A DNA stretch of 62,956 nucleotides, filler included, from Octopus bimaculoides (Eukaryota), in the NCBI RefSeq assembly GCF_001194135.2. It is 5 parts of 5 records of this genome, joined end to end, with 100 filler letters (N's around TTAATTAATTAA, not from the genome) between each part and the next. Parts side by side here need not be neighbours in the genome. Positions count along the whole stretch, not along the records: positions 1 to 18,721 come from NC_068984.1; 4 more parts are not named here. One strand, written 5' to 3'. The notes beneath the pieces were generated by a model. The model did no database searches. It saw only the letters and a program-made list of their open reading frames with translations, and was not told the origin of the DNA. Below, in pieces: positions 1-21,220 of this stretch (position 1 is its first letter; every line of letters starts with the position of its first letter). The translations under genes were made by a program, and so were the position numbers.

Positions 1-484
1 AAGATTATTTTTTTTCCAAATATATATATATATATATATAAAACGAAACGAAAAACAAACAAGCAAAGCAAATACAGACCACTTCTAAATGAATGTCTTT
101 AACAATAAGACTAATTGTTAAGGATCGGAAATGAAATAAGAAGATATTTAGCATTATCTATCAGCCCACCCTGCTTAAACTAGAAAGAAAAAACCCAATA
201 TCTTCATACATACATACATACATGCATAGTTTCCGTCTACTCAATCCACTCATAAAGCTTTGGTCGGCCCAAGGCTATAGTAGAAGACACTTACCCAAGG
301 TGCCACGCAGTGGGAATGAACCCGGAACCATGTGGCTGGGGAGCAAGCTTCTTACCACACAGCCACACCTGCACCTACACCTACACAGTCACGTTGTATT
401 ATGTGGTAATGTTTTATCAAGTAGAAAAGCACTCGATCAGCTAAGAGAGTAAAGATAATCTTATAATAAAAATTACAAGTCTTG

Positions 485-494
485 TTAAATACAG
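485..494 (-). CDS. Possible terminal coding exon (C TGT ATT TAA) of the IB-like gene
   Basis: Strong acceptor TTTTCTTTCTTTGTTTTCTTCCATGTAG| at 495. A phase-2 join with exon 7080-7267 gives ...NTE-S-C-I-stop and supplies an eighth Cys. No canonical poly(A) signal seen; could be chance. Confidence 0.25.
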
Positions 495-544
495 CTACAT
501 GGAAGAAAACAAAGAAAGAAAAACACAAGAGATAATCAGTGCTA

Positions 545-2660
545 CAATAATTCGATGTAAACAAGGTATTTATGGTTTACTTGGTGTTCGGTGGCCTACT
601 TTTAAATTCCGACAAGATGTATTTCTTAAAATGCGGACAAATTCCTGGAACTTATGTATTCGTTAGAGGTCTTCAAGTTTTTTAAGAGATGTAATTTTCC
701 AACAGAATATACTAAGCATTGACACCGTTAAGATCTGGTTTTAGAGAGGATTTTCCATTTGATGTCGAAGCTGGTCCCTTTGTCTTTAATTTCCAGATTA
801 CAGCCAAAAGGATCGTCGAATGTCTCTTATTACGGTGTCTAAAATTCGAAAGATAGTTGTTATATCTGATTTTAAATTTACCTTCCACGGCTCTGATATA
901 ACTTTTGTCGTAGTTCGCAGAAACCTGTGATATGCATCAAGAGCGGGCTTGAGTCGTCTGTTGCTTCTTGATATATGACTTAATATTAGGGGGACATGAA
1001 TAAGTAATTTTAATCGTGTGTCGGTTATAATTTTTATTGTATCTATTGGTTCTAGGGAAAACAAAAGAACCTTAAATACGAGGGAAACCACTTGATGATA
1101 CCTTCAGGTATCAGTCTGCCGGCCGGTGTCGTCGTTCTTGAAAAAGGTCCGGATCAACTTCCAACTGTTCTTACGGTTCCCGACACGCATTCAGTCGTGA
1201 CTACTTTTGATCTTCTGCGAGGCACAAATTTTGCTGAAACTCTTTTCATGCGCAATTCCTCACTCAAAATTCGTTGGTAGGAGCTCCAGGTAATACCAAT
1301 CATATCAACAAATTCGTCAACTGTTCAGCGATGGTCCTCCAAGATCATTTCATGAATTTTCGTGATGTTTTTATTCGTATTTTTGGATCAACAATTATTG
1401 TGCAGATACGCCTTGCCATACTGTATGGAATGTTCTTTTTGATGTGTGAAAGATAGCAAGAGTAGAAGTTCAAGTATTGATGCGTGTCCGTTTTTATTGT
1501 AAAATATGTCCGTTGTGACTGCAGAGTCGCGTATTTTTATGTGAATGTCTATGACTGGTATGTCATTATAATTGGTCTCTGTCGTGAATTTGATAGATTG
1601 GTGAAGAGTGGTGAGGATGTTATTAGATATTTGTAGATAATCATTTGATCTATCCCCCAAATTGAAGCTGTCATCGAGGAAGCGTTTCCACTTTTCAATG
1701 ATATATTTTGAATTCTCTACTTCGTCGTATAGTTTTTTCTAAGAAGCCCATGACCAGGTTGGTATATGAAGGTGCAAATTTTGTCCCCATAGCCGTGTCC
1801 TTTGTCTGTCGATATATTCCATTATCAAAGCTAAAGGAGTTCCCTTCTAGTGCCAGGCATGTGACCTTGTTAACGAAGTCCGTTTTGAAGCGTTCGCTTA
1901 TCCTCCCTCTATGTTTTTTCTATCCAGCGTTTGATTACTTTCAGGCCGTAAGTGCGAGGTATATTAGTATAAAGGTTAGTGACGTCGACAATTGTAAATT
2001 GTAAACTTTGGGGTTTATTGGTCAGTTACCCTGTTTATTGTTCCAATGAGGCTTGAGATGGATAAAACTGCAGCTTGTTCCCCATTCTTAATGTCAGCAG
2101 GTGCCATCTAAATAAAATTTACCAAAAACCTGGGCTCTATCAGTTTCAGTCCTTGTGTTTGTTCGTTTTTCTGTTTTGCATTTCGAGTTTTTGTCCTTGT
2201 TCTTGTCTTTGCTTTTAGTTTCAGGCTTGAGAGCATCACTTTTCCTGGCTGCATCGCTTGTTTGCCCGTCTCCATTTTTCACTATAGTTGCGTTTCGACT
2301 GTTTTCGTTGCATCCGTTGTTGCTTCGAGTACTGTTTTTTTAGGACGGGTGGTGCTCGTGGCTACTTTCTTTTTTGATGCCGTCTGTCTATCCTTCGTAG
2401 GTTTCAGAACATGCTAGGTCATCATTGACCACTTCGTCTGTTTCATTAATAATGTTGTCTAGGAAGTCGAGGTGTAGTTTGATAAGAGCATAGGAGAGTA
2501 TGAACTCCTGATTTTTTTTCGCTCGATTTATGCCATAGACCTATGGAAAATCTAGCTTTTAAGGCTACTGCTATTAGGTCTCTCAACGGACATTCCTCAC
2601 TCATGTCCCACGATGGAAGAAAGAGTCGAAGTTCATCAAACTATTAATTTCGACGCATCT
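545..2660 (-). mobile_element. Decayed Penelope-like retroelement (RT + GIY-YIG), frameshifted
   Basis: Minus-strand RT motifs VDVTNLYTNIP (~1955-1990), TAMGTKFAPSYTNLVMGFL (~1739-1795) and WKRFLDD (~1670-1690). GIY-YIG-like YIRAVEGKFKIRYNNYLSNFRHRNKRHSTILLAVIWKLKDKG (~780-930). K/T-rich N-terminal region to ~2600. Confidence 0.9.
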
Positions 2661-3856
2661 TTTGTATTTTGTTTGCCTCAATCTGGCTCGGTACAAGTTC
2701 GCGGCTTTTGGTGTACATTTGTTGATTTTACGTAGTATAAAAGTACAGTCACAATATACATGCATACACACACACACACACACACANNNNNNNNNNNNNN
2801 NNNNNNNNNNNNNNNNNNNNNNNNNNNNNNNNNNNNNNNNNNNNNNNNNNNNNNNNNNNNNNNNNNNNNNNNNNNNNNNNNNNNNNNNNNNNNNNNNNNN
2901 NNNNNNNNNNNNNNNNNNNNNNNNNNNNNNNNNNNNNNNNNNNNNNNNNNNNNNNNNNNNNNNNNNNNNNNNNNNNNNNNNNNNNNNNNNNNNNNNNNNN
3001 NNNNNNNNNNNNNNNNNNNNNNNNNNNNNNNNNNNNNNNNNNNNNNNNNNNNNNNNNNNNNNNNNNNNNNNNNNNNNNNNNNNNNNNNNNNCGATGTACC
3101 CAACAAAGTACGATGACTTCTGTTCATCCTTATATATCCGTGAAAGAGGCTGGCTTTATCCAGTTGCATCTCGGTAACACGTGCTTTTACAGAATAATAT
3201 TCAGCACTGAATATATTCTAATTATTTATAATATAATATAGGATAAAATCTTTATAAGAATTTATCAAGTAGTCAGCGTGAAAAAATCCCATAAGGAAAA
3301 AAACCCATCGTTTTTTTTCCATAAATATATATAATTTATATAAGGGCATTATTATATAGTAATGCCTCACGCTTAGAGGGACCAAATAAGTCAAAACTAC
3401 CAAAAAATAATCACATATTTACCGAAAGCGAGGGAATGCAACTTTAAAAAATTAACCTCCTAAAAACATGAAACATAAAACAAGAATATTGGCAGTGTCA
3501 AATTTCAAGGTCTCATCTAGCTAAGCCATCAGTCCAATGATGGCTTAGCTGGCTGAAACTTCGAAGTCACTCTCAATGCTGTTCTTGTTAAAGAATAAGT
3601 TTATACTCCACCAAATGTATTAAGTATTTGCAATACAAATGTATCCTTCAGTTTAATGTAAAGTCACTTTTAGCATAACAAAAACAAACATTAATATACA
3701 TATGTAGGGTGTGTGCTAAGAGACTGCTTCCCAGTTACATGGTTCCGAGTTCAGTCTCACTGCGTAGTATCTTGGGCAAGTATCTTCCACTATAGTCTAG
3801 GGCCGACTAAAGACTTGTAAGTGGATTTCGCAGATGGAAACTGAAAGATGCCTGTC

Positions 3857-3906
<50 letters not shown>

Positions 3907-4427
3907 NNNNNNNNNNCCTGTCGTGTATATATATATCTGTGTATGAGTGTATGTGTGAGAATGTGTGTGTCTATGTGTGTGTGCATGTGTATGTGTATTT
4001 GTGGTTGTGGTTGTCCCCCACGATCATTTGACGATCGGCGTTGGTGTATGTACGAAGTCAACCCAAATATAGATATTTTGAATCATTTAATACGTACATT
4101 TCATGTCTACGTAATATATAATAGGATATAATAGGAAATACATCCATTATATAAGACTTCTTTAGTTAAAACATTTCAAAATGTATACACACACAGACTC
4201 AAATATATACATACATATATNNNNNNNNNNNNNNNNNNNNNNNNNNNNNNNNNNNNNNNNNNNNNNNNNNNNNNNNNNNNNNNNNNNNNNNNNNNNNNNN
4301 NNNNNNNNNNNNNNNNNNNNNNNNNNNNNNNNNNNNNNNNNNNNNNNNNNNNNNNNNNNNNNNNNNNNNNNNNNNNNNNNNNNNNNNNNNNNNNNNNNNN
4401 NNNNNATATATATATATATATATATAC

Positions 4428-5840
4428 ACCAATCATCACTGCCAAAATTTGGCATCTCATTACATTGCTATTTAAAGGAGAGCTGGAAGATGTATTTGGA
4501 CGATTGCTTTATAGTTTGGAAAGACAGCATGGACAAACTCCTCGATTTCCAAATAATGCTTAACAATATTAATAGCAACATACAATTCACCATGGAGCAC
4601 AGCAATAAACAACTACCTTCTCTTGACATCCTAATTAAAATTGTCAATAACCACATCGAAACAAACATCTTCTATAAGCCCACAGATTCTAAACAATACC
4701 TATTATTCAACTCCTGCCACCCCAAACACATAAAAATTAACATACCATATAATCTAGCGAAAAGAATCTGTTTCGGATACTGATACTCGTGAACAAAGAC
4801 TCCTTGAACTCAGATCAATACTAATCAAAAGACATTACCCAATATCATTAATAAATGATGGCATTAAACGAGCTAAGGACATAGATATACGAACATTAAG
4901 GGAAGTCAACGGAAATACTACACGGAACTAAAAGATACTCCCGTACATCTCCACACAACCCTAGAAACAATGAAACCTTCAGCATCATCATCCAAATTCT
5001 ATCCATTCTCACAGGTGATAAAACAATGAACAAAATTTTAGGCTCACATAAAATTATCAAAAGCAAAATGCAACCGAAATCAATGAAAAAAATATTAACC
5101 AGTGCAAGACTATATCCATTAGCAACGGAACCAAAAGTAAAAAAAATGTGGTCGACCTAACCTTTTGGAGGGTTCACAGTTCCACTTTAAACAAGGTGAA
5201 ATATTTAAGATTAAATCAAATTTCACCTGTGCTTCTGAAAACCTAATCTATGCCATTGCATGCTTAGGGTTTGGTAATCATTATATTGGCCAAACAGGAA
5301 AATCACTCCGTCGAAGAAACACTCTCCACAAAGAACAAATCCGCCACCCACAATACAGACAGATACAGGTTAGTGGACACATAGAAAGGTGTGCTAGGAA
5401 CCTTAATCCTAATTTCCTAATTTTCCCCTTCTATCAATGTTCACAGAACACCTCAGTACAGCAAAGAATGAATAAAGAGGCAACTTTCATCAGTAAATAT
5501 CTTCCACAACTCAATATGAACACATAACATAATACACAACACTACTAACCTTTCAATTAATACCACTAACCCCCATACATCCCATACACCATTCACATTA
5601 CAGATTTATATCTACCTTAATTGCACCAAGTCCAGAACTACTTACCTCCCTTACACATAATCTTTTTACTCAGGGACTAGTAGACCCGACACCGTTCGGT
5701 AATCGGTGCGCATTCAAAGCAGTGAACAGAAATTTTACGAAACCAGTATGCCTTTGAATCTCTTTAACAATTCACAATAACGACTTTTATTACTTTTATT
5801 CCTACCTCAGTTCATCTTATTGTATATATCTATCGTATCT
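4428..5840 (+). mobile_element. Penelope-like retroelement, 3' half (RT C-terminus/thumb, GIY-YIG, 3' terminal repeat)
   Basis: WKMYLDDCFIVW...YKPTDSKQYLLFNSCHPKHIKINIPYNLAKRIC, then FTCASENLIYAIACLGFGNHYIGQTG...EATFISKYLPQLN (ORF 5165-5527). The 5' part falls in an N gap. Confidence 0.92.
5712..5759 (+). ncRNA. Decayed hammerhead motif in the 3' repeat of the Penelope element at 4428-5840
   Basis: Stem I ATTCAAAGCA/TGCCTTTGAAT (10 bp, 1 bulge); core GTGAACA (2 changes from CTGAAGA); GAAA; ACCAGT (1 change from palindrome ACCGGT); GUA triplet. Confidence 0.5.
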
Positions 5841-7079
5841 TTTCATAAAAAGCCTTTACTTTTTTGATTTCCAATGTGCATTTTCGCTTATTTATCTTCT
5901 TACTTTCCCCCTACATTTCCACATGTAGTTTCTATTTTCTTTTTGTAACATATTTCGATTATATATATANNNNNNNNNNNNNNNNNNNNNNNNNNNNNNN
6001 NNNNNNNNNNNNNNNNNNNNNNNNNNNNNNNNNNNNNNNNNNNNNNNNNNNNNNNNNNNNNNNNNNNNNNNNNNNNNNNNNNNNNNNNNNNNNNNNNNNN
6101 NNNNNNNNNNNNNNNNNNNNNNNNNNNNNNNNNNNNNNNNNNNNNNNNNNNNNNNNNNNNNNNNNNNNNNNNNNNNNNNNNNNNNNNNNNNNNNNNNNNN
6201 NNNNNNNNNNNNNNNNNNNNNNNNNNNNNNNNNNNNNNNNNNNNNNNNNNNNNNNNNNNNNNNNNNNNNNNNNNNNNNNNNNNNNNNNNNNNNNNNNTGT
6301 GTGTGTGTGTGTGTGTGTGTATATGTTTGTGTGTCTGTGTTTGTCCCCCCAACATCGCTTGACAACCAATGGGGGTGTGTTTATGTCCCCGTAACTTAGC
6401 GGTTCGGCAAAAAGAGACCGATAGAATAAGTACTAGGCTCACAAAGAATAGGTCCTGGGGTCGACTTGCACGACTAAAGGCGGTGCTCCAGCATGGCCAC
6501 AGTCAAATGACTGAAACAAGTAAAAGAGTAAAGAGTAAATAGTAACGTTAAGGTAAAACTCAGCTCCTAAATGAAATTGTATAACCATGTTGTTGCTCCC
6601 TAAGAGAACAACACTGTTCAAAACCCAGGCTTAAGGACATCAGGCAATCCAAATCTCCAGTCTAATCACAAACGCTCCGAACTGACAACATCAGAACAAA
6701 ACGTTTTCGTTTGCCTTGTAACATCTGAACTCGTTAAGGAAACGCCAGCTGTACCTAAGGTCAAAACAGTGACCTACGTTCCCCATCCCAACATATGTAC
6801 GTATAAATATCAAAACAAGTCAAACCTTACCAGACACTCCTCCTTCCCCCCTACTATTACTATTCCTTTTCTCTCTTTCTATCACTTTTTCTCTTCTTTA
6901 TCAACATAGAACAACTACACAATCTAGGCACTTAGTACAATCATATCAATTCCATCGCCCTCCATGAATTTATACACACAGTTAGTCCAAATACACACAG
7001 GTCCGCTAATATTATCAGTAAACCAGTAAACGTTCTCACCAATAAAATAAAATGCATGTTAATAAACATTTTTCCATAC

Positions 7080-7267
7080 CTTTCTGTATTTGAATTACAG
7101 CTTTCGCCCTGTAGAACGGCACATGCTGAACAATCTGAACATCTCGCATCAACGGTAATGCAACCGTCTGTTATAGTTGGGCAACCCCCACTGCAGTCTA
7201 CCGCAACTGCTGCAGTAAAAAGCATTGACATAAAGGCCACGAAAAATACAACTCTGATGGAGTTCAT
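7080..7267 (-). CDS. First coding exon of a small secreted cysteine-rich protein with a reduced IGFBP N-terminal (IB/SIBD/perlustrin-like) domain
   Basis: ATG in ACCATGA context. Hydrophobic signal peptide MNSIRVVFFVAFMSMLFTAAVA, then VDCSGGCPTITDGCITVDARCSDCSACAVLQGESCNSNTE. C-x2-C-x2-CA-x3-GESC matches the IB motif GCGCCxxCAxxxGExC with one Cys replaced. Consensus donor AG|GTATGG at 7080/7079 (phase 2); protein-like character stops at the donor. Confidence 0.85.
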
Positions 7268-7320
7268 GGTGATATCAGGCGTATTAAGTTGTTCAATATC
7301 ATAAAATGAATAGCGGGGAA

Positions 7321-7328
7321 CTTATATA
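7321..7328 (-). promoter_or_regulatory. Candidate TATA box (TATATAAG) upstream of the IB-like exon; its terminal AG could instead be a weak splice acceptor
   Basis: Minus strand reads TATATAAG ending 53 nt before the ATG; no other AG lies between it and the ATG. Confidence 0.3.
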
Positions 7329-7564
7329 GTTTGACAAATAATTGATTTATTAAAAAAATTATATTCAAACTGGCGACAGCTGATGCATTTTCTTTTTTAA
7401 CAACCTTAAAAAGTATTTATTTTTATGATTTTCGATTATTTATGCTATTATTATTATTATTTACAACCACAATACTATTGAAAAATATACTTACATACAT
7501 ATACACAAACGTGTGTGTAGGTGTGTCTGCGCGTGCACTCCCCACCTCGCACGAACACACACAT

Positions 7565-7943
7565 AAACATATGTACTCTTTTATTCTTTTACTTGTTACT
7601 GCGGCCATGCTGGAGCACCGCCTTTTACTCGGGCAAATCGATCCCAAGACTTATTCTTTCAAAAGCCGAGCACGTATACTAGCGGTCTCTTTTGCCGAAC
7701 CGTTAGTTACGGACACACAGACACCAGCATTGGTTGTCAAGTGATGGTGGTGGGGAGGCATAAACACACAAAAATATATTCATATACGACGGGCTTCTTC
7801 TAGTTTCCGTCTACCAAATCCACTCGCAAGGCTTTGGTCGGCTCGACACTATAGTAGAAGACCCTTGCCGAAGGTGCCACGCAGTGGGACTGAACCCGGA
7901 ACCATGCGGTTGGGAAGCAAGCTTCTTATCACAGAGCCACGCC

Positions 7944-7979: not shown

Positions 7980-8104
7980 NNNNNNNNNNNNNNNNNNNNN
8001 NNNNNNNNNNNNNNNNNNNNNNNNNNNNNNNNNNNNNNNNNNNNNNNNNNNNNNNNNNNNNNNNNNNNNNNNNNNNNNNNNNNNNNNNNNNNNNNNNNNN
8101 NNNN

Positions 8105-8850: not shown

Positions 8851-10536
8851 TTATTACCTGTTTTGGTTGTTTTTCATGAATATGATGAATCCTTATTAGA
8901 AATCATCTTTTCTCTCTTTTTGGATCCCCTCAAAAGTTTGAATTGTTCTTTTCGAACTTACCTTTTCTCCTATATATTTATGTACATTATATATTATATG
9001 TATATACATATATGTACTAATAAATACTAATAGGCGCAGGAGTGGCTGTGTGGTAAGTAGCTTGCTTACCTCACACCTGTTCGGACGTGTTTTTTAGCTG
9101 CTCCTGTCGCGTCGCTGTATGCCAGCGTCGTGAATTTTTGACGCACAACTACAGGTAAGACTTTTGTGTTTTTTTGGATTTAGTGGGGGTTTGTTGCTCG
9201 TGTTTATTTATATTTATGTCGAACAAGAAACCTCCACTGAGTTCCACGCATTTGTTTGCCGTAGTTGTGCTTAAAGTCTCACTTAGCGGTGAGAAGTGTG
9301 TTTTGGGGGCGTATCCCGCCTACAAAAATTGTGAACTTTGTTTTTGTGTTCCTGTTGCTGTGTTCCTGCTACTATTTAGTTGGCCTGGAGTACTGGTGGC
9401 CGGAAGACTGTATTGTGAAATTTTAGTTACCAATTTTTGTTGAATTTATTGGTGAGATTTGTGAAGCTTTGTTCCGGTTGCTACACCAGTCGGCCGGGAG
9501 TACCAGTTGGCGGGAAGATTGAAGTTGCTGTGTTTCGGACTGTTTTCTTTCCTTCTTTCTTCCTTTGCTTTTTTTTCTATNNNNNNNNNNNNNNNNNNNN
9601 NNNNNNNNNNNNNNNNNNNNNNNNNNNNNNNNNNNNNNNNNNNNNNNNNNNNNNNNNNNNNNNNNNNNNNNNNNNNNNNNNNNNNNNNNNNNNNNNNNNN
9701 NNNNNNNNNNNNNNNNNNNNNNNNNNNNNNNNNNNNNNNNNNNNNNNNNNNNNNNNNNNNNNNNNNNNNNNNNNNNNNNNNNNNNNNNNNNNNNNNNNNN
9801 NNNNNNNNNNNNNNNNNNNNNNNNNNNNNNNNNNNNNNNNNNNNNNNNNNNNNNNNNNNNNNNNNNNNNNNNNNNNNNNNNNNNNNNNNNNNNNNNNNNN
9901 NNNNNNNNNNNNNNNNNNNNNNNNNNNNNNNNNNNNNNNNNNNNNNNNNNNNNNNNNNNNNNNNNNNNNNNNNNNNNNNNNNNNNNNNNNNNNNNNNNNN
10001 NNNNNNNNNNNNNNNNNNNNNNNNNNNNNNNNNNNNNNNNNNNNNNNNNNNNNNNNNNNNNNNNNNNNNNNNNNNNNNNNNNNNNNNNNNNNNNNNNNNN
10101 NNNNNNNNNNNNNNNNNNNNNNNNNNNNNNNNNNNNNNNNNNNNNNNNNNNNNNNNNNNNNNNNNNNNNNNNNNNNNNNNNNNNNNNNNNNNNNNNNNNN
10201 NNNNNNNNNNNNNNNNNNNNNNNNNNNNNNNNNNNNNNNNNNNNNNNNNNNNNNNNNNNNNNNNNNNNNNNNNNNNNNNNNNNNNNNATATATATATATA
10301 TATATATATACACGACAAGAAATAATGTTTGTCTCTTTTTATGGAAACAAAAGTGTTTATAGGACTGCAAAAAAGAAGTGTTCAAATATAATTGAGACAG
10401 AGATAAGAAACATTGATCATAGAACAAACATCAAATTCGAGTCAACGGCTTCATATATAACCCCATACTGCCAAACATTTGATCATATATAAATATATAA
10501 ATGTCACCATGGTTCTTAAACATATAAAGCATACAT

Positions 10537-11392: not shown

Positions 11393-12427
11393 TATAGCTT
11401 GTTTCACAACTATTTGGTTCCAGGTTCAGTCCAACTGTGTGGTACTTTGCATAAGTGTCCTACTATAGCCTTGGGCCGACCAAAGCCTTGTGAGTGGATT
11501 TGGTAGACGGAAACTGAAAGAAGCCCGGCCCGTCGTATATATGTGTGTGTGTGTGCGTGTCTGAGTTTGTCTCCTCCTCATCGCTTGACACCCGAGTTGG
11601 TGTATTTACGTCCCCATAACGTAGCGGTTCGGCAAAAAGAACCGATAGAATAAGTACTAGGCTTACAGAGAATAAATCCTGGGGGTGATTTGTTCGACTA
11701 AAGGCGGTCTGCCTTCCTCTCTTTGATCTTCAGCCTTAACTAGCGAATCCTAAACCCCGACCCTATACCTAATTGGCTTTTTACGCACTTATATATTTCT
11801 TCACTTTTTACTCTTTATTTTTTTTTTTGCTTTTTCTGTATTTTTTCTTTTTTCTTTATCTTCTGTTCTCTCCCAGTTACTCACATTACTAAACCTAGTA
11901 TACTCTTTTTTTTTACTCTCTTACTTGTTTCAGTCATTTGACAGCGGCCATGCTGGAGCACCACCTTTAGTGGAGCAAATCGACCCCAGGACTTATTCTT
12001 CATTACGTTCTGAGTTCAAATTACACCGTGGTCGACTTTGCTTTCATCCTTTCGGGGTCGATAAAATTAAGTACCAGTTGCGTACTGGGGTCGATCTAAT
12101 CGACTGGGGATCCTCCCTAAAAATTTCGGGCCTTGTACCTAGAGTAGAAAGAATTATTCATTTGTTATTGTTCGTTTGGTTATAATACACAAGAGAGATT
12201 TACGATATATCGGACATCCTGGAGTATACCAACAACGTACAATCAACGTAACATGTGCTTTGGACAAACCTCTTGGCGCTAAATACACATAAGGTTGGTT
12301 TCCTCTGTGTATACAACAGGAATATTCTATTTAATATTGATCGACCATGGGTAGTGACCACAGGTTTATGCAACCCTACTTGGTACATAAATTTTCTAGT
12401 ACCCGATTTTATCTGAATCCTTATTAT

Positions 12428-12458
<31 letters not shown>

Positions 12459-13145
12459 ACACGATTACGACTTCCAGTTTCCATCTACCAAATTCACTCA
12501 GAAGGTTTTGGTTGGTCTGGAGCTATAGTAGAAGATACTTGCCCAAGGTGTCATGCACTGGGACCGAACACAGAAACAAGTGGCTGGGAAGCAAAATTCT
12601 GACCACACAATAAAATAAAATAAAAACTACCTTCCCTTCCCTTCCCCCGAGCTACGAAAAATGCATTTTTTACGCAAGTGTATCTTTAATAACAGAATGC
12701 CTGGAATCCTGTTCACAAATATATACATAAAAGCTAAATGTAGTGATTCATAAAATCTTTATTCGAGAAGTAACAGATGTTGTTTTTGAAAGGCGTTGTG
12801 GTATTATTTTGCGATTTATTGTTCATTTTTTCGTTCATTTTCCCTATATTTACTTACGTTCAACCAGTGTTGCATTTAAAAGACCCAGAATAATCTTGTT
12901 ATAGAAATTGCGTCATGGCTATCAGTAAACATTTCCATACGATTAATGTTTCACATCAATATTGCACTTGAGTGCAGGACTTATGAGAAAATAGAGCACC
13001 GAGCTAAATGCTACTAATAGCCTTGTAATATATACAAAAGTAGTGAGCCGAAAAAATCGTTAGCACGCAGAGCAAAATGCTTAGCGGTATTTCATCCGTC
13101 GTTACGTTGTAAGTTCATATTCCGCTGGGGGTCAGCTTTGCCTTT

Positions 13146-14540
13146 TAGCTCCTTTCATCTTCACGGGATCGTTGAAAAGTACCATTTGAGCAATAGGGCC
13201 GTTGTAATGGGGAATACGGGATTTTTGGTATGATGCAGTGCCGTCCAGTTCGAGGATTGGTATAACTGTCAATTCCAAAATTGGGAGTTAAAACTTTCAA
13301 GATCTTCCAAATATATATCATTGCATATCTCTCTCGTCTTCTCTCCGAGGAATAGAGACTCAGCTCCTTTAACCTCCCCCAGTAGCCCATCTTTTGCATC
13401 AAGTCAGTCTTCTTTGTGTATTGGCGCTGGATTGCTTCAAGATCCACAATTTGTTTCACACTCTCTAGGGACCATAGTTGGGTGCAGTAGCCCAAGCGGC
13501 TTAGAACGAAAGTCTTCCATAGGAGTTGCAGGGCCTCCTTTTCCTGGTTCTGAATGTCCTCAGCATCCATCCAGCCACTCGCCTGCACAGTGTTACCGTT
13601 TTGGTAGTATGCACATGGAATGTTGTACCATTGCTCATGTGAACTCCCAGGTCACGCAGCGACTCTGACTCTAGGATCGTATTACCTTTAGGTCCAGTGT
13701 ATTCCGATTTTAGCCTGGCGTTGGACCGATAGTGGAGTGCTTGTAANNNNNNNNNNNNNNNNNNNNNNNNNNNNNNNNNNNNNNNNNNNNNNNNNNNNNN
13801 NNNNNNNNNNNNNNNNNNNNNNNNNNNNNNNNNNNNNNNNNNNNNNNNNNNNNNNNNNNNNNNNNNNNNNNNNNNNNNNNNNNNNNNNNNNNNNNNNNNN
13901 NNNNNNNNNNNNNNNNNNNNNNNNNNNNNNNNNNNNNNNNNNNNNNNNNNNNNNNNNNNNNNNNNNNNNNNNNNNNNNNNNNNNNNNNNNNNNNNNNNNN
14001 NNNNNNNNNNNNNNNNNNNNNNNNNNNNNNNNNNNNNNNNNNNNNNNNNNNNNNNNNNNNNNNNNNNNNNNNNNNNNNNNNNNNNNNNNNNNNNNNNNNN
14101 NNNNNNNNNNNNNNNNNNNNNNNNNNNNNNNNNNNNNNNNNNNNNNNNNNNNNNNNNNNNNNNNNNNNNNNNNNNNNNNNNNNNNNNNNNNNNNNNNNNN
14201 NNNNNNNNNNNNNNNNNNNNNNNNNNNNNNNNNNNNNNNNNNNNNNNNNNNNNNNNNNNNNNNNNNNNNNNNNNNNNNNNNNNNNNNNNNNNNNNNNNNN
14301 NNNNNNNNNNNNNNNNNNNNNNNNNNNNNNNNNNNNNNNNNNNNNNNNNNNNNNNNNNNNNNNNNNNNNNNNNNNNNNNNNNNNNNNNNNNNNNNNNNNN
14401 NNNNNNNNNNNNNNNNNNNNNNNNNNNNNNNNNNNNNNNNNNNNNNNNNNNNAATTGTCTTCCAGCTTTGAAATAGAATATGTCCAGAATCGTTTTCCAT
14501 TAAACCAAACTGTTCCTTCCGATACCCATATTGTTCATTT
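13146..14540 (-). mobile_element. 5'-truncated CR1/L2-group LINE, RT C-terminal region (partly in gap)
   Basis: LWKTFVLSRLGYCTQLWS...LEAIQRQYTK...YWGRLKELSLYSSERRRERY matches the CR1/L2-type post-RT motif (LVRPxLEYC...LYSLERRR). Confidence 0.85.
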
Positions 14541-15364
14541 TGTACATTTTTAGTTCGTCAAAGACATAAAACTGGAAAAATATTTCTTCAAAATTCTGTT
14601 TTTCTAAGATATTGATCGTAACACTTTGGCACCCGTCCTAAAGGAAGAAATGATGCTTTACTGAAGTCAAATAAAACTAGAAATTCTTTTGTTTTATGTT
14701 TTTGGTCAGTTTAGAAGTTCAACTTCTTTTTCTATCATTATATTTAGGAGTAGCTGAGTGGTAAAAAGTTTGGTTCCCAACCACAATAGCTCTAGGGATC
14801 CACATAGTGATCTCTCATATTGTTTACGTTTAAATAGAATTCACGGTCCTCGGACGTTTTTAAAGTATGCTGACCAATAGTTGAAAGTGATATTATTTAA
14901 TAATCTTAATTTCTACTCTTCTTATTTAATTTCATATATCTGTGTTCTCTAGCCAGTTGATTCACTGCTGAATGTCATTCATTTGCAGTCATTTTCTGGT
15001 TTAATTTTTGTGTTTATATTTTACGATGTATTAGAATCTTTTGTTCATTAAAAAACAAACAAACGGAAAAACACATTTCAAATCGTTTCTGTCATTAATT
15101 TTTTCAGTGAACTACAGTCCGATGTTATTGTTAGTTTCGTGTTGTTTAAAATGAAATAGAATTTGACTGGCTTTCTTTACCATATCATTTCCCCTTCCGC
15201 AAAGTAAAAAAAAAAGTACTCCGAAATGCAACAGAAGTGGTGTGTTATGTGATATTGCTTCTTAGGCCCCGTGATGGTGGTAATATTGTTGATGCAGGGT
15301 CATGTGTTACAAACTGTACGACTTCCTTGTTGTACTACAAAAGACATGTAAAATTCACTCACTC

Positions 15365-16075
15365 ATTCCCCACCATCCAACTTCTCCTGTTTCGCTCAAC
15401 ACCTCCACCGTCTATGCCATCCCAAGCGATTTTCCTCTCACTCACGCTGAACGAGCTTTACTTAGCAGAGGTCTTAATTTAATTCCTCTCAAAATCACGC
15501 CCGGTGAATTCGACGCACGCGCCAATACAGAAAGTTTCCTTCCTCGGATCCAACTCAGGGCATTTTTCTACAACAAAAGCCCAGTTCCTCCAATTGAGGA
15601 CGACTTTACTACGCTCAAAAAGAGTTTCTCCAACTGGACACCAAACCTAGGATTACACCGTTTGGTAGATATATTCATTAATAAATGCCGTTTCGATCTC
15701 GTTACTTTCAATTTAGATAGAAAACCAAGCATTTCGAACCTTCCCCCATCGGAACTGGACGCCCTCCGGAAGCTCCGCTAACGTAAGGACATTGTTATTA
15801 AGCTAGCCGACAAAAGGAGCGCCGTTGTTGTTTGGCGAGCCGACCTTTATAGAAAAGGAATACTCCACCAACTCAGCGACCTCCAGATACTACATGAAGA
15901 TACCATTACTAGAGGAATGTTTCGACCACTGTCCATCAGCTGGTCTTTTCTGGTTCACTGCCACGCACTGCCACCAACCTCATTGTCACCACACCCCGAA
16001 CTTCCACTGTCTATTTCGTCCTTAAAATACATAAACAACATAATTCCGGCCGCCCTATTGTCGACTTTTTCTTTT
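15365..16075 (+). mobile_element. Decayed Penelope-like element fragment (pre-RT region and start of RT)
   Basis: LTHAERALLSRGLNLIP...NLPPSELDALRKL*RKDIVIKLADKRSAVVVW...HQLSD and TPRTSTVYFVLKIHKQHNSGRPIV, matching the PLE pattern DIVIKPADKGGAVVV / PxFYxLPKIHKxxxPGRPIV. Confidence 0.85.
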
Positions 16076-17002
16076 ATCCTTTCGGAGTCGATGAATAAAG
16101 TACCAGTGAAACATTGCGGTCGATGTAATCGACTAGTCCTCCCCCACACCAAATTTCAGACCTTATGCCTTTAGTAGAAAGGATTATTATTATTATTATC
16201 GCTATCCATGTGCCAAAATTTGAAACTATCATACCTGTGAAACACTGGGACGATGTAATCGACTTAATTCCCTTACCCAATCTGCTCTTGTGACAAAAAT
16301 TTAAAATCATTATTATCTGTCTAGGCTTAATAATCGATAAATTGCTTTTATTCACTAACAACAAACCTGAAAATTTGTGACGCAATTTAGTATATAACTA
16401 TGTAATATTCGATTTGTCAATATCGATGTTTTTCAATGCCAAATATGAAGTCAACTGATTCACAGATGTTTTAATGACAGCATTTTTATATTGGATTATG
16501 AGATAAATTCGCCTTTTTTTTGTCTGCTATCCATTTAAAAAACATTCTTTCCAATGTCATTTGAATTAACTCGAAAATACTTTTATCGTACTACATGTTT
16601 TTGTTTTTGTTGGTATGCTTTCCCTCTGCAGCTGTCGATTATCGATTTTGAAAATTGAATAAACTTTGTCTTACTTTTCAGACATGTGGCAATGGTGTAC
16701 CATGTAGAAAAAAAGGACTTACGACTTTATCTGACAACCCAACACATTGCTACCGTTGAGGATCTGTAGGTCTATTGTGAAGCAAGTCAATGACTCGCTG
16801 GCCTATGATCATGTTGATCTATAATTATATTCAATAGCATCCCAAAAGTACTAGTTTAGGGCGTCGAGTCGGTGGGATCATTTGCGCGTCGAACAAGACG
16901 TGTTGCAGTAATTGTTCCGGTGAGTTCAAATCCCGGAGATGTCATCTTTATCCTTCATTCCAAAACTGATGACTAAAGTACCAGCCTAGGGTTTGGGAGG
17001 AG

Positions 17003-19450: not shown

Positions 19451-19753
19451 ACAGCAACAGCAACAGCAGCAACAACAAGAACAGTAATAACAACGAATGC
19501 AATGACGTATGTGTATATGACGTGTGTGTTTGAGAAAATTATTCGAGTGATTGTGTGCAAATTTAATTTGTATTCGTGCGTGTGTGCATATATACACACA
19601 CACACATTATCTTCGTACGTATGCGTTTACACACACACGCAATGCCATTGATGGACAACGACACACCTTGTATCTACGCGAGATAATCAGTATCTGCATT
19701 ACAGAATTGACTAAAAAAAAATTTCATAATTCATAATTACATTATTTTTATTA

Positions 19754-19803
<50 letters not shown>

Positions 19804-19825
19804 AATAATAATAATAATAATATTG

Positions 19826-19887
<62 letters not shown>

Positions 19888-20020: not shown

Positions 20021-21220
20021 ATTATTTGGTGGTTGATAGAAATCAAAATTAATATTTAGAAAGACTTTATTAATATTTTGCAGGGTAATAGCTGAACAAT
20101 CGAACACCACAATACACGTTGATATTTCGCTCGAATGAGTGAACAATACATGTTTAGATTAACAATAAGCGTTTTATATTTTTCTAATGAAGTGTGGATG
20201 ACCACACAAACGACAGATATGAGAGATAATCAAACGAAAGTCGTTCACTTAAGTTAGTAATTATGAAGACAAATAATAATCTTTTGAAAATATTGCAGTC
20301 TGCCCTTTCACGGCATCGCACACGCGTACGCACACACATGCATAATACATATATAATACATACATGCATACATAGATACATACATACATACATACATATA
20401 TACATACAGTACATATATATAATACGGACACATACACGCACACATACACATGAATAAATGAATATGCGTATATATATATCTTTATATATGCATGCGTATT
20501 ATTATATTAATGTTTGTTGTCTTGTATAGATATATAACAGCCGAGCATTAAATCGAACGTTCATTCAATAATTTTCGGTAAAGCGCCATATTCATTACTG
20601 CAAGAAGAAGGTTAATTGTGACTTCGAAGTTTCGGGTTACTTGTATTAATCAGACAATGGCTTTGTTTTTTTTTCAAGCCTTGTATATAGATTTACTCTG
20701 TATTTTTCTGTTCTTTCTTTACTTGTTTCAGCCATTTGACTGCGGCCATACTGGGGCACCGCCTTGAAGAATTTTTATTCGAATATATTGACCCCCCTAT
20801 ACTTATTTTTAAAAGTCCGGTACTTATTCGATCAATCTTTTCCTGAACGGTTAGATTACGGGGACGTAAACACACCAACACCAGTTGCCAAATGGTGGTG
20901 GAAGAACAAACACAAACATAAATACAAGCACACATGCGCACGCGCGTACACACACACACACACACGCATATATATACACAGTATATACACATATATACGA
21001 CAGGCTTTTTTTAGTTTCCGTCTATCAAATCCACTCAGAAGGCTTTGGTTGCACCGCGGCTATAGTAGAAGATTCTTGCCCAATGTATTCATTTTGTATG
21101 AAATTATGTACGTATATTGGATGTTATTTCATATACATGTATTTGTCTATGTTGTTCTAATACATGCTTGGCTACTGGAACATAAACATGTGTCTGGGAC
21201 TTCCCTTATATGTACACGTA

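What the first reader, a model, noticed from the sequence alone, without database searches (positions are those of the whole stretch)
7080..7267. Secreted mini-protein with a reduced IGFBP (IB) domain that appears to have lost one whole disulfide pair
Seen: a signal peptide followed by C-x3-CP-x5-C-x6-C-x2-C-x2-CA-x3-GESC-x3-TE. Established: the canonical IB domain (IGFBP-4 numbering) pairs C1-C5, C2-C6, C3-C7, C4-C8, C9-C11 and C10-C12. Perlustrin, crustacean and arachnid single insulin-binding domain proteins and venom IGFBP-like peptides use this fold. Here the GCGCC motif reads RCSDC (C6 replaced by D) and one N-terminal Cys is also absent. That is the reciprocal loss expected if C2-C6 was removed, leaving a three-rung ladder. 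The domain is also split by a phase-2 intron before C10, unlike vertebrate IGFBPs, whose IB domain lies in one exon. Inference: a lineage-specific compact secreted IB peptide (insulin-binding modulator, immune or gland/venom-type peptide).
Basis: partly seen in the sequence, partly recalled or inferred. Interest (0 to 1): 0.78.

Follow-up and report, generated by a model that had tools for sequence, protein, structure and literature searches.

The report
Fast-evolving octopus IGFBP-like secreted protein

Summary
On the minus strand, 7267-7080 encodes a signal peptide followed by C-x3-CP-x5-C-x6-C-x2-C-x2-CA-x3-GESC-NSNTE. It ends at a phase-2 AG|GT donor and lies behind a TATA box.

It is exon 1, not a whole mini-protein. 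The only homologue among 1.84 billion representative proteins is Octopus sinensis XP_029634581.2, an uncharacterised protein of 115 aa in 3 exons. It has the same reduced Cys framework (RCANC) and completes the domain with C-LENLV-C...GKC.

Synteny puts exon 2 of this genome in the assembly gap that starts 17 nt before its acceptor, at the window edge. Exon 3 is intact about 3.2 kb beyond the window.

IB homology is supported but below threshold:
- Pfam IGFBP scores 18.9 and 22.9 bits against a cut-off of 28.
- hhalign gives 92.6% probability.
- The best PDB sequence hit is IGFBP-5.
- A canonical 12-Cys O. bimaculoides IB gene has an intron at the same place and phase.

New here: the mature-peptide codons are 69.7% identical between the species, against 91-95% for promoter, signal peptide and intron. 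dN/dS is about 2.8, and all Cys codons are identical.

Disulfide pairing and function remain untested. The most likely role is a scaffolded binder under diversifying selection, not a conserved endocrine insulin binder.

The parts
7321..7328 (-). TATA box (TATATAAG), 61 nt upstream of the ATG
   Evidence: Read directly. The box and its surroundings are identical in the O. sinensis alignment, where the proximal promoter 7268-7420 is 95.3% identical. Its function as a promoter is inferred.
7202..7267 (-). Start codon and signal peptide (MNSIRVVFFVAFMSMLFTAAVA), with predicted cleavage after A-V-A
   Evidence: The sequence has an n-region with Arg, a hydrophobic core, and small residues at -3/-1; the cleavage site comes from this rule only, since no SignalP was available. 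17 of the first 18 O. bimaculoides residues are identical in O. sinensis, with one inserted Val there. The DNA of codons 1-23 (7199-7267) is 91.3% identical.
7080..7201 (-). Mature-peptide part of exon 1: the IB-like ladder subdomain, VDC-SGG-CP-TITDG-C-ITVDAR-C-SD-C-SA-CA-VLQGES-C-NSNTE, 7 Cys (C1/2, C3, C4, C5, C7, C8, C9 in IB numbering)
   Evidence: Pfam IGFBP scores 18.9 bits, E 0.0025, model positions 4-46 of 55. hhalign gives 92.6%. The region 7080-7198 is only 69.7% identical in DNA to O. sinensis; dN is 0.476 and dS 0.171, and all 7 Cys codons are identical.
7078..7079 (-). Splice donor GT (AG|GTATGG), phase 2
   Evidence: The donor is identical in O. sinensis, where the annotated 115-aa protein requires it. 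The canonical IB gene P0008/L004 has its intron at the same place and phase.
1..7077 (-). Intron 1, the part that is assembled. It holds repeats, Penelope-like element fragments and four N gaps
   Evidence: Synteny with O. sinensis intron 1. No exon-2 candidate was found by motif, acceptor or tblastn scans.
1..149 (-). Conserved 3' end of intron 1. The sequence stops 17 nt before the acceptor of exon 2, which lies in the adjoining assembly gap
   Evidence: blastn aligns L020 19698-19840 to window 149-1. Read side by side, O. sinensis continues ...aataatctt|tcaaatttttatttcag|CTGTCTGGAG...

Best explanation
SHOWN. Window 7267-7080 (minus strand) is coding exon 1 of an unannotated three-exon gene of Octopus bimaculoides. 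It is the orthologue of O. sinensis LOC115210245 (XP_029634581.2, 'uncharacterized protein', 115 aa).

The gene has a TATA-box promoter. Exon 1 carries the signal peptide and the first seven Cys. A phase-2 intron of about 7 kb follows. Exon 2 lies in an assembly gap here; in O. sinensis it reads (S)CLENLVCANEVNEYFEGLVPDWAIRFVGKCTTK. Exon 3, at G000:C4:137379866-137379950, encodes a Ser/Thr/acidic tail, (K)DASMTPGVGQSVSTETPVSDSIMEIDS*.

The product is a secreted, acidic protein of about 100 aa whose core is a divergent IGFBP-N-terminal (IB)-like domain with 10 Cys instead of 12. C6 of the GCGCC motif and one of C1/C2 are missing.

INFERRED. There are five disulfides: a three-rung ladder plus C9-C11 and C10-C12.

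SHOWN. Between the two octopus species, the signal peptide, promoter and introns are 91-95% identical, whereas the mature-peptide codons are 62-70% identical. Replacement changes are in excess (dN/dS about 2.8, and dN is about 6 times the local non-coding divergence), while every Cys codon is kept.

INFERRED MECHANISM. The disulfide scaffold is held constant while its surface loops are diversified by positive selection. This fits a secreted binder working at a fast-changing interface, such as saliva or venom, immunity, or reproduction, rather than a conserved endocrine insulin/ILP carrier.
For: - Exon, frame and donor.
- Single copy in the genome.
- Only homologue in 1.84e9 representatives: P0001, E 9.3e-11, 56% identity over 1-62, same Cys spacing.
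- P0001 is XP_029634581.2, encoded by a 14.5-kb gene next to transketolase.
- Exon map in O. sinensis.
- Synteny shows exon 2 falls in the N gap and exon 3 is conserved as an ORF with a 27-nt in-frame indel.
- IB homology: Pfam IGFBP is the only hit for exon 1 and by far the best for P0001, at 18.9 and 22.9 bits. PDB hmmsearch best hit is IGFBP-5, E 0.0064. hhalign against canonical IB domains gives 92.6%, E 4.4e-7. Foldseek's top 12 hits are all IB domains.
- The canonical octopus IB gene P0008 has an intron at the same place and phase.
- Accelerated evolution: 69.7% identity in the mature codons against 92.6-95.3% in the flanks. There are 32 non-synonymous and 4 synonymous changes. Fisher p = 1.8e-12 for non-synonymous against non-coding sites. 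Changes by codon position are 16/12/8.
- Exon 3 coding sequence is 62% identical, against 94% for the intron and 90% for the 3'UTR.
Against: - No direct transcript or protein evidence was reachable for either species. The O. sinensis model is a RefSeq prediction carried by one contig only.
- Exon 2 of this genome is unseen, so intactness of the O. bimaculoides gene is inferred from exons 1 and 3.
- All IB profile scores are below Pfam's 28-bit cut-off.
- The better AlphaFold model is of low confidence (pLDDT 58), and its alignment contained canonical IB domains, so the fold hits are not independent.
- dN/dS rests on 39 codons and one species pair. dN against dS alone gives p = 0.058.
- Gene conversion from an undetected paralogue could mimic the acceleration.
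- The gene is single copy, unlike typical expanded toxin or antimicrobial peptide families.
- The protein is strongly acidic (counted by eye from the sequences), unlike cationic antimicrobial peptides.
Confidence: 0.7

Rival explanations
1. It is a conventional single-IB-domain (SIBD/perlustrin-type) endocrine modulator. It would bind octopus insulin-like peptides in the haemolymph, and the reduced Cys set would be a neutral variation.
For: The IB-like domain is supported. It shares gene architecture with the canonical octopus SIBD-type gene P0008. Invertebrate SIBDs are reported to bind insulin/IGFs and to act in immunity (PMC7866140).
Against: A conserved endocrine binder would be expected to be under purifying selection, yet here mature-region dN is about 6 times the non-coding divergence. 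The residue aligned with the IGF-contact Val49 of IGFBP-5 is Ser in both species. No relatives were detected outside Octopus among 1.84e9 representatives.
Confidence: 0.15
2. It is an acidic extracellular-matrix or biomineral-associated protein. The model is perlustrin, the nacre protein with IB homology. In an octopus it would act in the stylet, statolith, beak, egg case or mucus.
For: The mature protein is strongly acidic (roughly -5 for exon 1 here and about -10 for the O. sinensis protein, counted from the sequences). It has a Ser/Thr-rich tail. Perlustrin and IB-domain proteins occur in mollusc shell matrices and in octopus skin-mucus proteomes. Matrix proteins also evolve fast.
Against: No sequence relation closer than the general IB fold was found. 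There is no repeat or low-complexity mineral-binding block. No expression data are available.
Confidence: 0.1
3. It is a dying gene or pseudogene remnant in O. bimaculoides. Exon 1 would survive by chance, exon 2 would be lost rather than hidden, and the divergence would reflect relaxed constraint.
For: Exon 2 cannot be found anywhere in the assembly. The gene is not annotated in this genome.
Against: Relaxed constraint cannot push dN far above the neutral (intron and promoter) divergence. All seven Cys codons, the ATG, the donor, the TATA box, the exon-3 acceptor and an in-frame exon-3 ORF with a 27-nt indel are preserved. The alignment to O. sinensis breaks exactly at the N gap, 17 nt before the acceptor, which is what an assembly gap predicts.
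Confidence: 0.05

Closest known systems
Single insulin-binding-domain (SIBD) proteins and the IGFBP N-terminal (IB) domain, Pfam PF00219. Examples are Cupiennius salei SIBD-1 (PDB 3zxb), perlustrin, and O. bimaculoides P0008
   Same: Both have a signal peptide followed by one small Cys-rich domain. The CP, CxxCA-x3-G-x2-C and C-x2-(G/N)L-x-C ... GxC motifs are shared. The phase-2 intron before C10 is the same as in P0008. The best profile, PDB and fold hits are all IB domains.
   Different: It has 10 Cys instead of 12. GCGCC reads RCSDC or RCANC. It scores below the Pfam threshold. It has an extra C-terminal Ser/Thr/acidic tail from a third exon. Its mature region evolves very fast. It has been detected only in Octopus.
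Vertebrate IGFBP-6 N-domain, the known 10-Cys IB variant
   Same: It has five instead of six N-domain disulfides because of losses within the GCGCC motif (PMC3356058).
   Different: IGFBP-6 lacks the last two adjacent Cys of the motif (C6 and C7) and has rearranged pairing and a different fold. The octopus protein keeps C7 and lacks C6 plus one N-terminal Cys, which is compatible with simple deletion of one ladder rung. IGFBP-6 also has linker and thyroglobulin domains.
Rapidly evolving disulfide-rich secreted peptides, meaning conotoxin-type precursor genes, and IGFBP-related peptides found in arthropod venoms such as remipede xibalbin 7
   Same: The signal peptide and non-coding DNA are conserved, the mature region is hypervariable, and the Cys framework is invariant. 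IB-type peptides have been found in venoms (PMC5577568).
   Different: It is a single-copy gene with no detected family expansion. No gland expression or toxicity data exist. The comparison with conotoxin gene organisation rests on general knowledge and was not tested here.

Membership tests
IGFBP N-terminal / IB domain (Pfam PF00219) | Profile score at or above Pfam's gathering cut-off (28 bits) | tested here: not met
   Exon 1 scores 18.9 bits, E 0.0025. The full O. sinensis orthologue scores 22.9 bits, E 1.3e-4. As controls, the canonical octopus IB genes score 29.7 and 42.6 bits.
IGFBP N-terminal / IB domain (Pfam PF00219) | Homology detectable by profile-profile comparison with canonical IB domains | tested here: met
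   hhalign of A1 (the two orthologues) against A2 (three octopus IB domains plus an IGFBP-5 piece) gives probability 92.6%, E 4.4e-7, over 52 columns from C3 to beyond C11. The PDB profile search has IGFBP-5 7ufg_D as best hit, E 0.0064.
IGFBP N-terminal / IB domain (Pfam PF00219) | Twelve conserved Cys forming six disulfides (C1-C5, C2-C6, C3-C7, C4-C8, C9-C11, C10-C12) | tested here: not met
   There are 7 Cys in exon 1, where 9 are expected, and 10 in the full mature O. sinensis protein. The canonical pattern is as described in PMC7866140 and PMC3356058.
IGFBP N-terminal / IB domain (Pfam PF00219) | GCGCCxxC motif | tested here: not met
   It reads RCSDCSAC here and RCANCIAC in O. sinensis. 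C5, C7, C8 and the following Ala are kept; C6 is Asp or Asn.
IGFBP N-terminal / IB domain (Pfam PF00219) | C-terminal subdomain motif C10-x2-GL-x-C11 ... G-x-C12 | tested here: inconclusive
   O. sinensis exon 2 has C-LE-NL-V-C ... G-K-C, that is Gly replaced by Asn. In this genome the exon lies in an assembly gap and cannot be read.
IGFBP N-terminal / IB domain (Pfam PF00219) | IB fold, a rigid disulfide ladder plus a three-stranded sheet | tested here: inconclusive
   AlphaFold2 gave pLDDT 45 with 2 sequences and 58 with 5 sequences. Foldseek's top hits are all IB domains (HtrA1 N-domain, IGFBP-4 at TM 0.56, IGFBP7, SIBD-1). However, E is at least 0.015, and the alignment contained canonical IB domains.
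IGFBP N-terminal / IB domain (Pfam PF00219) | Gene structure shared with a bona fide family member of the same genome | tested here: met
   P0008 (UniRef 'IGFBP N-terminal domain-containing protein', O. bimaculoides) has signal peptide plus C1-C9 in exon 1 and a phase-2 intron six codons after C9, exactly as here.
Functional IGF/insulin binders (IGFBP-1 to -6, SIBDs) | Hydrophobic IGF-contact residues (IGFBP-5 Val49, Leu70, Leu74) and measurable ligand binding | tested here: inconclusive
   The position aligned with Val49 is Ser in both octopus proteins (alignment; residues from PMC3356058). The Leu70/Leu74 loop cannot be aligned reliably. Binding itself is not testable with these tools.
IGFBP-6-type 10-Cys N-domain | Loss of the last two adjacent Cys of GCGCC | tested here: not met
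   Only the middle Cys (C6) of the motif is lost, and C7 is retained. The second lost Cys is N-terminal.
Neuroparsin family (arthropod IB-related hormones) | Match to the Pfam neuroparsin profile | tested here: not met
   No neuroparsin family was listed at E up to 10 for exon 1 or for P0001.
Diversifying-selection secreted peptides (toxin / host-defence type) | Conserved signal peptide and non-coding DNA, hypervariable mature region, invariant Cys framework, dN above dS | tested here: met
   Identity is 91-95% in signal and flanks against 69.7% in the mature codons. dN is 0.476, dS 0.171, ratio 2.8. All 7 Cys codons are identical. p = 1.8e-12 for non-synonymous against non-coding sites. This rests on one species pair only.
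Diversifying-selection secreted peptides (toxin / host-defence type) | Gland- or immune-restricted expression; multigene family | tested here: inconclusive
   No paralogue was found in this genome, so the multigene-family feature is not met. Expression cannot be tested here: no transcript-derived protein is in the collections and no paper mentions the gene.

The most novel reading that the evidence does not exclude
An Octopus-restricted, positively selected five-disulfide 'mini-IB' scaffold has been recruited from the endocrine SIBD family into an arms-race role, as a salivary or venom component or a host-defence or reproductive factor. That would make it a new cephalopod effector-peptide framework.
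Probability: 0.25. Interest if true: 0.65.

Novelty: new variant of a known kind. Interest (0 to 1): 0.45.

Why it matters
IB domains are usually treated as conserved hormone-binding modules. Here a lineage-restricted derivative has dropped one ladder disulfide, falls below database thresholds, is labelled 'uncharacterized' in one species and is missing from the annotation of the other. Its mature peptide shows a toxin-like pattern of evolution on a fixed Cys scaffold. If expression proves glandular or immune, it adds a new scaffold to cephalopod secreted effectors. It would also be a natural experiment on how many disulfides the IB ladder needs. On the practical side, it shows that a real gene is hidden in O. 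bimaculoides by an assembly gap.

Tried and rejected
- **Exon 2 in or beyond the window.** I searched the window and 60 kb downstream by acceptor scoring, Cys-motif scans and tblastn. Nothing credible turned up.
- **Nearby candidate peptides.** RLCSCSML... (acceptor at 6924/6923) and the YDCTKCLDC ORF (6945-6904) lie in an interspersed repeat with copies on other chromosomes. I rejected both.
- **Read-through ORF.** The read-through ORF (108 aa from the ATG, with a hydrophobic tail) was rejected, because the sequence after 7080 is conserved at intron level and the orthologue splices there.
- **Word-based protein searches.** The exon and P0001 found no further relatives. A search with the P0008 model returned only itself, so no deep alignment could be built.
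- **Exons 2 and 3 elsewhere in the assembly.** O. sinensis exon 2 DNA and the exon 2-3 peptide found nothing elsewhere.
- **Structure prediction.** AlphaFold2 with 2 or 5 sequences gave low confidence, and no model coordinates are exposed. Disulfide connectivity therefore could not be read.
- **Literature.** No paper mentions LOC115210245 or XP_029634581.
- **Other hits of the representative search.** P0002 to P0007 are long repetitive proteins that match over short Cys- or Ala-rich stretches. I took them as spurious.

Full report
**1. What is in the sequence**

On the minus strand an ATG at 7267-7265 opens a frame that reads MNSIRVVFFVAFMSMLFTAAVAVDCSGGCPTITDGCITVDARCSDCSACAVLQGESCNSNTE. It then meets AG|GTATGG, with the last exon base at 7080 and the donor GT at 7079-7078, in phase 2.

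The N-terminus has the look of a signal peptide: Arg5, a hydrophobic core, and A-V-A before the likely cleavage site. This is by inspection only, since no SignalP was available.

A TATATAAG box lies at 7328-7321, 61 nt upstream of the ATG.

There are seven Cys after the signal peptide, and the GCGCC motif of IB domains reads RCSDC.

The exon and its promoter are single copy in the 2.34-Gb genome. An interspersed repeat starts about 73 nt into the intron.

**2. Which genome**

The window is G000:C4:137383106-137401882. A two-exon model that I built from another locus of the same genome is 100% identical to a UniRef entry of Octopus bimaculoides. The genome is therefore O. bimaculoides.

**3. 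It is exon 1 of a real, conserved gene**

An exhaustive HMMER search of 1.84 billion representative proteins found one true relative, P0001 (E 9.3e-11, 56% identity over residues 1-62). The other six hits are long repetitive proteins matched over short stretches, and I took them as spurious.

P0001 is XP_029634581.2, 'uncharacterized protein LOC115210245 [Octopus sinensis]', 115 aa. It is encoded by a 14.5-kb gene next to a transketolase gene. Its exons are:

| Exon | Product |
|---|---|
| 1 | MNSIRVVFFVAFVMSMLFAVRVVALCAETCPPVPDDCPIVQARCANCIACALGDEDNCNSASE, same donor, phase 2 |
| 2 | (S)CLENLVCANEVNEYFEGLVPDWAIRFVGKCTTK |
| 3 | NDSMVEAGQFSSSYESTR* |

The orthologue has the same reduced framework: C-x3-CP-x5-C-x6-C-x2-C-x2-CA, with RCANC. 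It supplies the missing C10, C11 and C12, giving ten Cys in all.

**4. Where exons 2 and 3 are in this genome**

blastn synteny gives these correspondences:

| O. sinensis locus L020 | Window coordinates |
|---|---|
| 9290-10382 | 7979-6896 |
| 19698-19840 | 149-1 |
| 20830-21182 | -1595 to -1940 |

Read side by side, the O. bimaculoides sequence stops at the N gap exactly 17 nt before the O. sinensis exon-2 acceptor. Exon 2 therefore lies in the 1403-N assembly gap that adjoins window position 1. It was not found anywhere else in the assembly.

Exon 3 is present outside the window, at window -3155 to -3239 (G000:C4:137379866-137379950). Its acceptor (ttacAG) is conserved, and it has an open frame, (K)DASMTPGVGQSVSTETPVSDSIMEIDS*. 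This differs from O. sinensis by many replacements and an in-frame 27-nt indel.

The gene is not in the protein collections for O. bimaculoides. It is therefore unannotated there, plausibly because of the gap.

**5. Is it an IB domain?**

- Pfam lists IGFBP (PF00219) as the only hit for exon 1 (18.9 bits, E 0.0025, model 4-46). It is by far the best hit for the orthologue (22.9 bits, E 1.3e-4, model 5-55). Both scores are below the 28-bit cut-off.
- A profile of the two orthologues has IGFBP-5 (7ufg_D) as best hit among all PDB sequences, E 0.0064. The alignment is CP=C3, C4, C5, [C6 to D/N], C7, C8-A, C9, C10, C11.
- hhalign against three canonical octopus IB domains plus that IGFBP-5 piece gives 92.6% probability, E 4.4e-7.
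- A genome-wide PF00219 scan found three canonical IB loci. One of them (L004 on C2, which is P0008) has its signal peptide and C1-C9 in exon 1, with a phase-2 intron six codons after C9. This is the same place and phase as here. Its spliced product passes the Pfam threshold at 29.7 bits.
- AlphaFold2 was not decisive, with pLDDT 45 and 58. Foldseek on the better model lists only IB domains in its top 12 (HtrA1 N-domain, IGFBP-4, IGFBP-3, IGFBP-7, spider SIBD-1, IGFBP-5). However, E is at least 0.015, and the alignment already contained canonical IB sequences.

I conclude that it is a divergent homologue of the IB domain. It fails three defining features of the family as curated: the score threshold, the 12 Cys and the GCGCC motif.

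**6. The lost disulfide**

The canonical pairing is C1-C5, C2-C6, C3-C7, C4-C8, C9-C11, C10-C12 (PMC7866140; six N-domain disulfides, PMC3356058). Here C6 and one of C1/C2 are absent in both species.

This could not be tested, because there is no confident model and no coordinates are exposed.

A 10-Cys IB domain is not unprecedented. IGFBP-6 lacks the last two Cys of GCGCC and has a rearranged fold. The set of Cys lost here is different.

**7. New observation: accelerated evolution of the mature peptide**

Aligning the orthologous DNA gives these identities:

| Region | Identity |
|---|---|
| Upstream, 701 nt | 92.6% |
| Proximal promoter | 95.3% |
| Signal-peptide codons | 91.3% |
| Mature-peptide part of exon 1, 119 nt | 69.7% |
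| Start of intron 1 | 93.4% |
| End of intron 2 | 93.7% |
| Exon 3 coding | 62.1% |
| 3'UTR | 90.3% |

By the Nei-Gojobori method the mature codons have dN 0.476 and dS 0.171, a ratio of 2.8. There are 32 replacement and 4 silent changes, and all seven Cys codons are identical. By codon position the changes number 16, 12 and 8 (counted).

Replacement changes exceed the local non-coding divergence with p = 1.8e-12, while silent sites do not differ from it (p = 0.12). dN against dS alone gives p = 0.058.

Relaxed constraint cannot raise dN above the neutral rate. The pattern therefore indicates diversifying selection on a fixed disulfide scaffold. Less likely, it reflects conversion from an undetected paralogue; none was found in this genome.

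**8. Function**

No expression data, paper or annotation exists for the gene. The following points bear on function:

- The residue aligned with the IGF-contact Val49 of IGFBP-5 is Ser in both species.
- The mature protein is strongly acidic (counted from the sequences).
- The gene is restricted, as far as the databases show, to Octopus.

Together with the selection pattern, I consider a role at a rapidly changing extracellular interface most likely: saliva or venom, host defence, or reproduction. A perlustrin-like matrix role and a classical insulin-binding role are the rivals. IB-type peptides are known from arthropod venoms, but their role there is uncertain.

**9. Verdict**

The locus is a new variant of a known kind: a sub-threshold, 10-Cys IB-like secreted protein. 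It is unannotated in this genome and has a clear signature of fast adaptive change. Interest is moderate. The decisive data are RNA-seq, gap filling, more cephalopod orthologues and a disulfide map, all of which lie outside these tools.

Noticed in passing
window 4166-5527 (+), inside intron 1: Two ORF fragments look like a retroelement: a reverse-transcriptase-like ORF at 4166-4783 (no Pfam hit) followed by an ORF at 5141-5527 with a GIY-YIG endonuclease domain (PF01541, 26.4 bits, above cut-off). I read this pairing as a Penelope-like retroelement. A similar RT-like fragment lies at 1388-1738 (-).
   Followed up: partly
window 6900-7006 (intron 1, just downstream of the donor): An interspersed repeat has 70-90% identical copies on C2, C4, C5, C10, C14, C18, C20 and an unplaced contig. 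It contains short Cys-rich ORFs that could be mistaken for exon 2.
   Followed up: yes
G000:C2:110289130-110290053 (L004 / L011): This is a canonical 12-Cys single-IB-domain gene of O. bimaculoides (P0008, 106 aa). Its IB domain is split by a phase-2 intron at the same position as in the gene under study. Its stop codon overlaps a GT that looks like a further donor (GCC AG|GTGAGG).
   Followed up: partly
G000:C3:139333476-139333628 (L002) and G000:C6:115151259-115151435 (L003): Two further IB domains in this genome are encoded without the intron, at 43 and 33 bits. The C6 one sits at the end of a 418-aa open frame rich in Ser, Pro and Asn-x-Ser/Thr sites.
   Followed up: no
window 2787-3091, 3907-3916, 4221-4405, 5970-6297, 7980-8104, 9581-10287, 13747-14452: N runs are flanked by (TA)n or (CA)n microsatellites, which suggests assembly gaps at simple repeats. 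About 24% of the 79 kb examined here is N.
   Followed up: partly
window 6439-6540, 7567-7700, 11900-12000 and elsewhere: A short element recurs that translates to ...GHAGAPP.../...AMLEHRL...PQDLFF... It also aligns to many places in the O. sinensis locus (L020 about 13000-13400). It looks like an abundant octopus SINE.
   Followed up: no
about 9.4-12.1 kb beyond the window start (window -9448 to -12108); L020 29780-34498: A transketolase gene lies on the opposite strand as the downstream neighbour in O. sinensis. The same region aligns at 84-92% in O. bimaculoides, which confirms that the two loci are orthologous.
   Followed up: partly
window 13145-13651 (-) and 15293-16174 (+): Long open frames of 130-168 aa have no Pfam match. 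The first resembles the C-terminal part of a LINE-type reverse transcriptase by eye. They are probably decayed transposon ORFs.
   Followed up: partly
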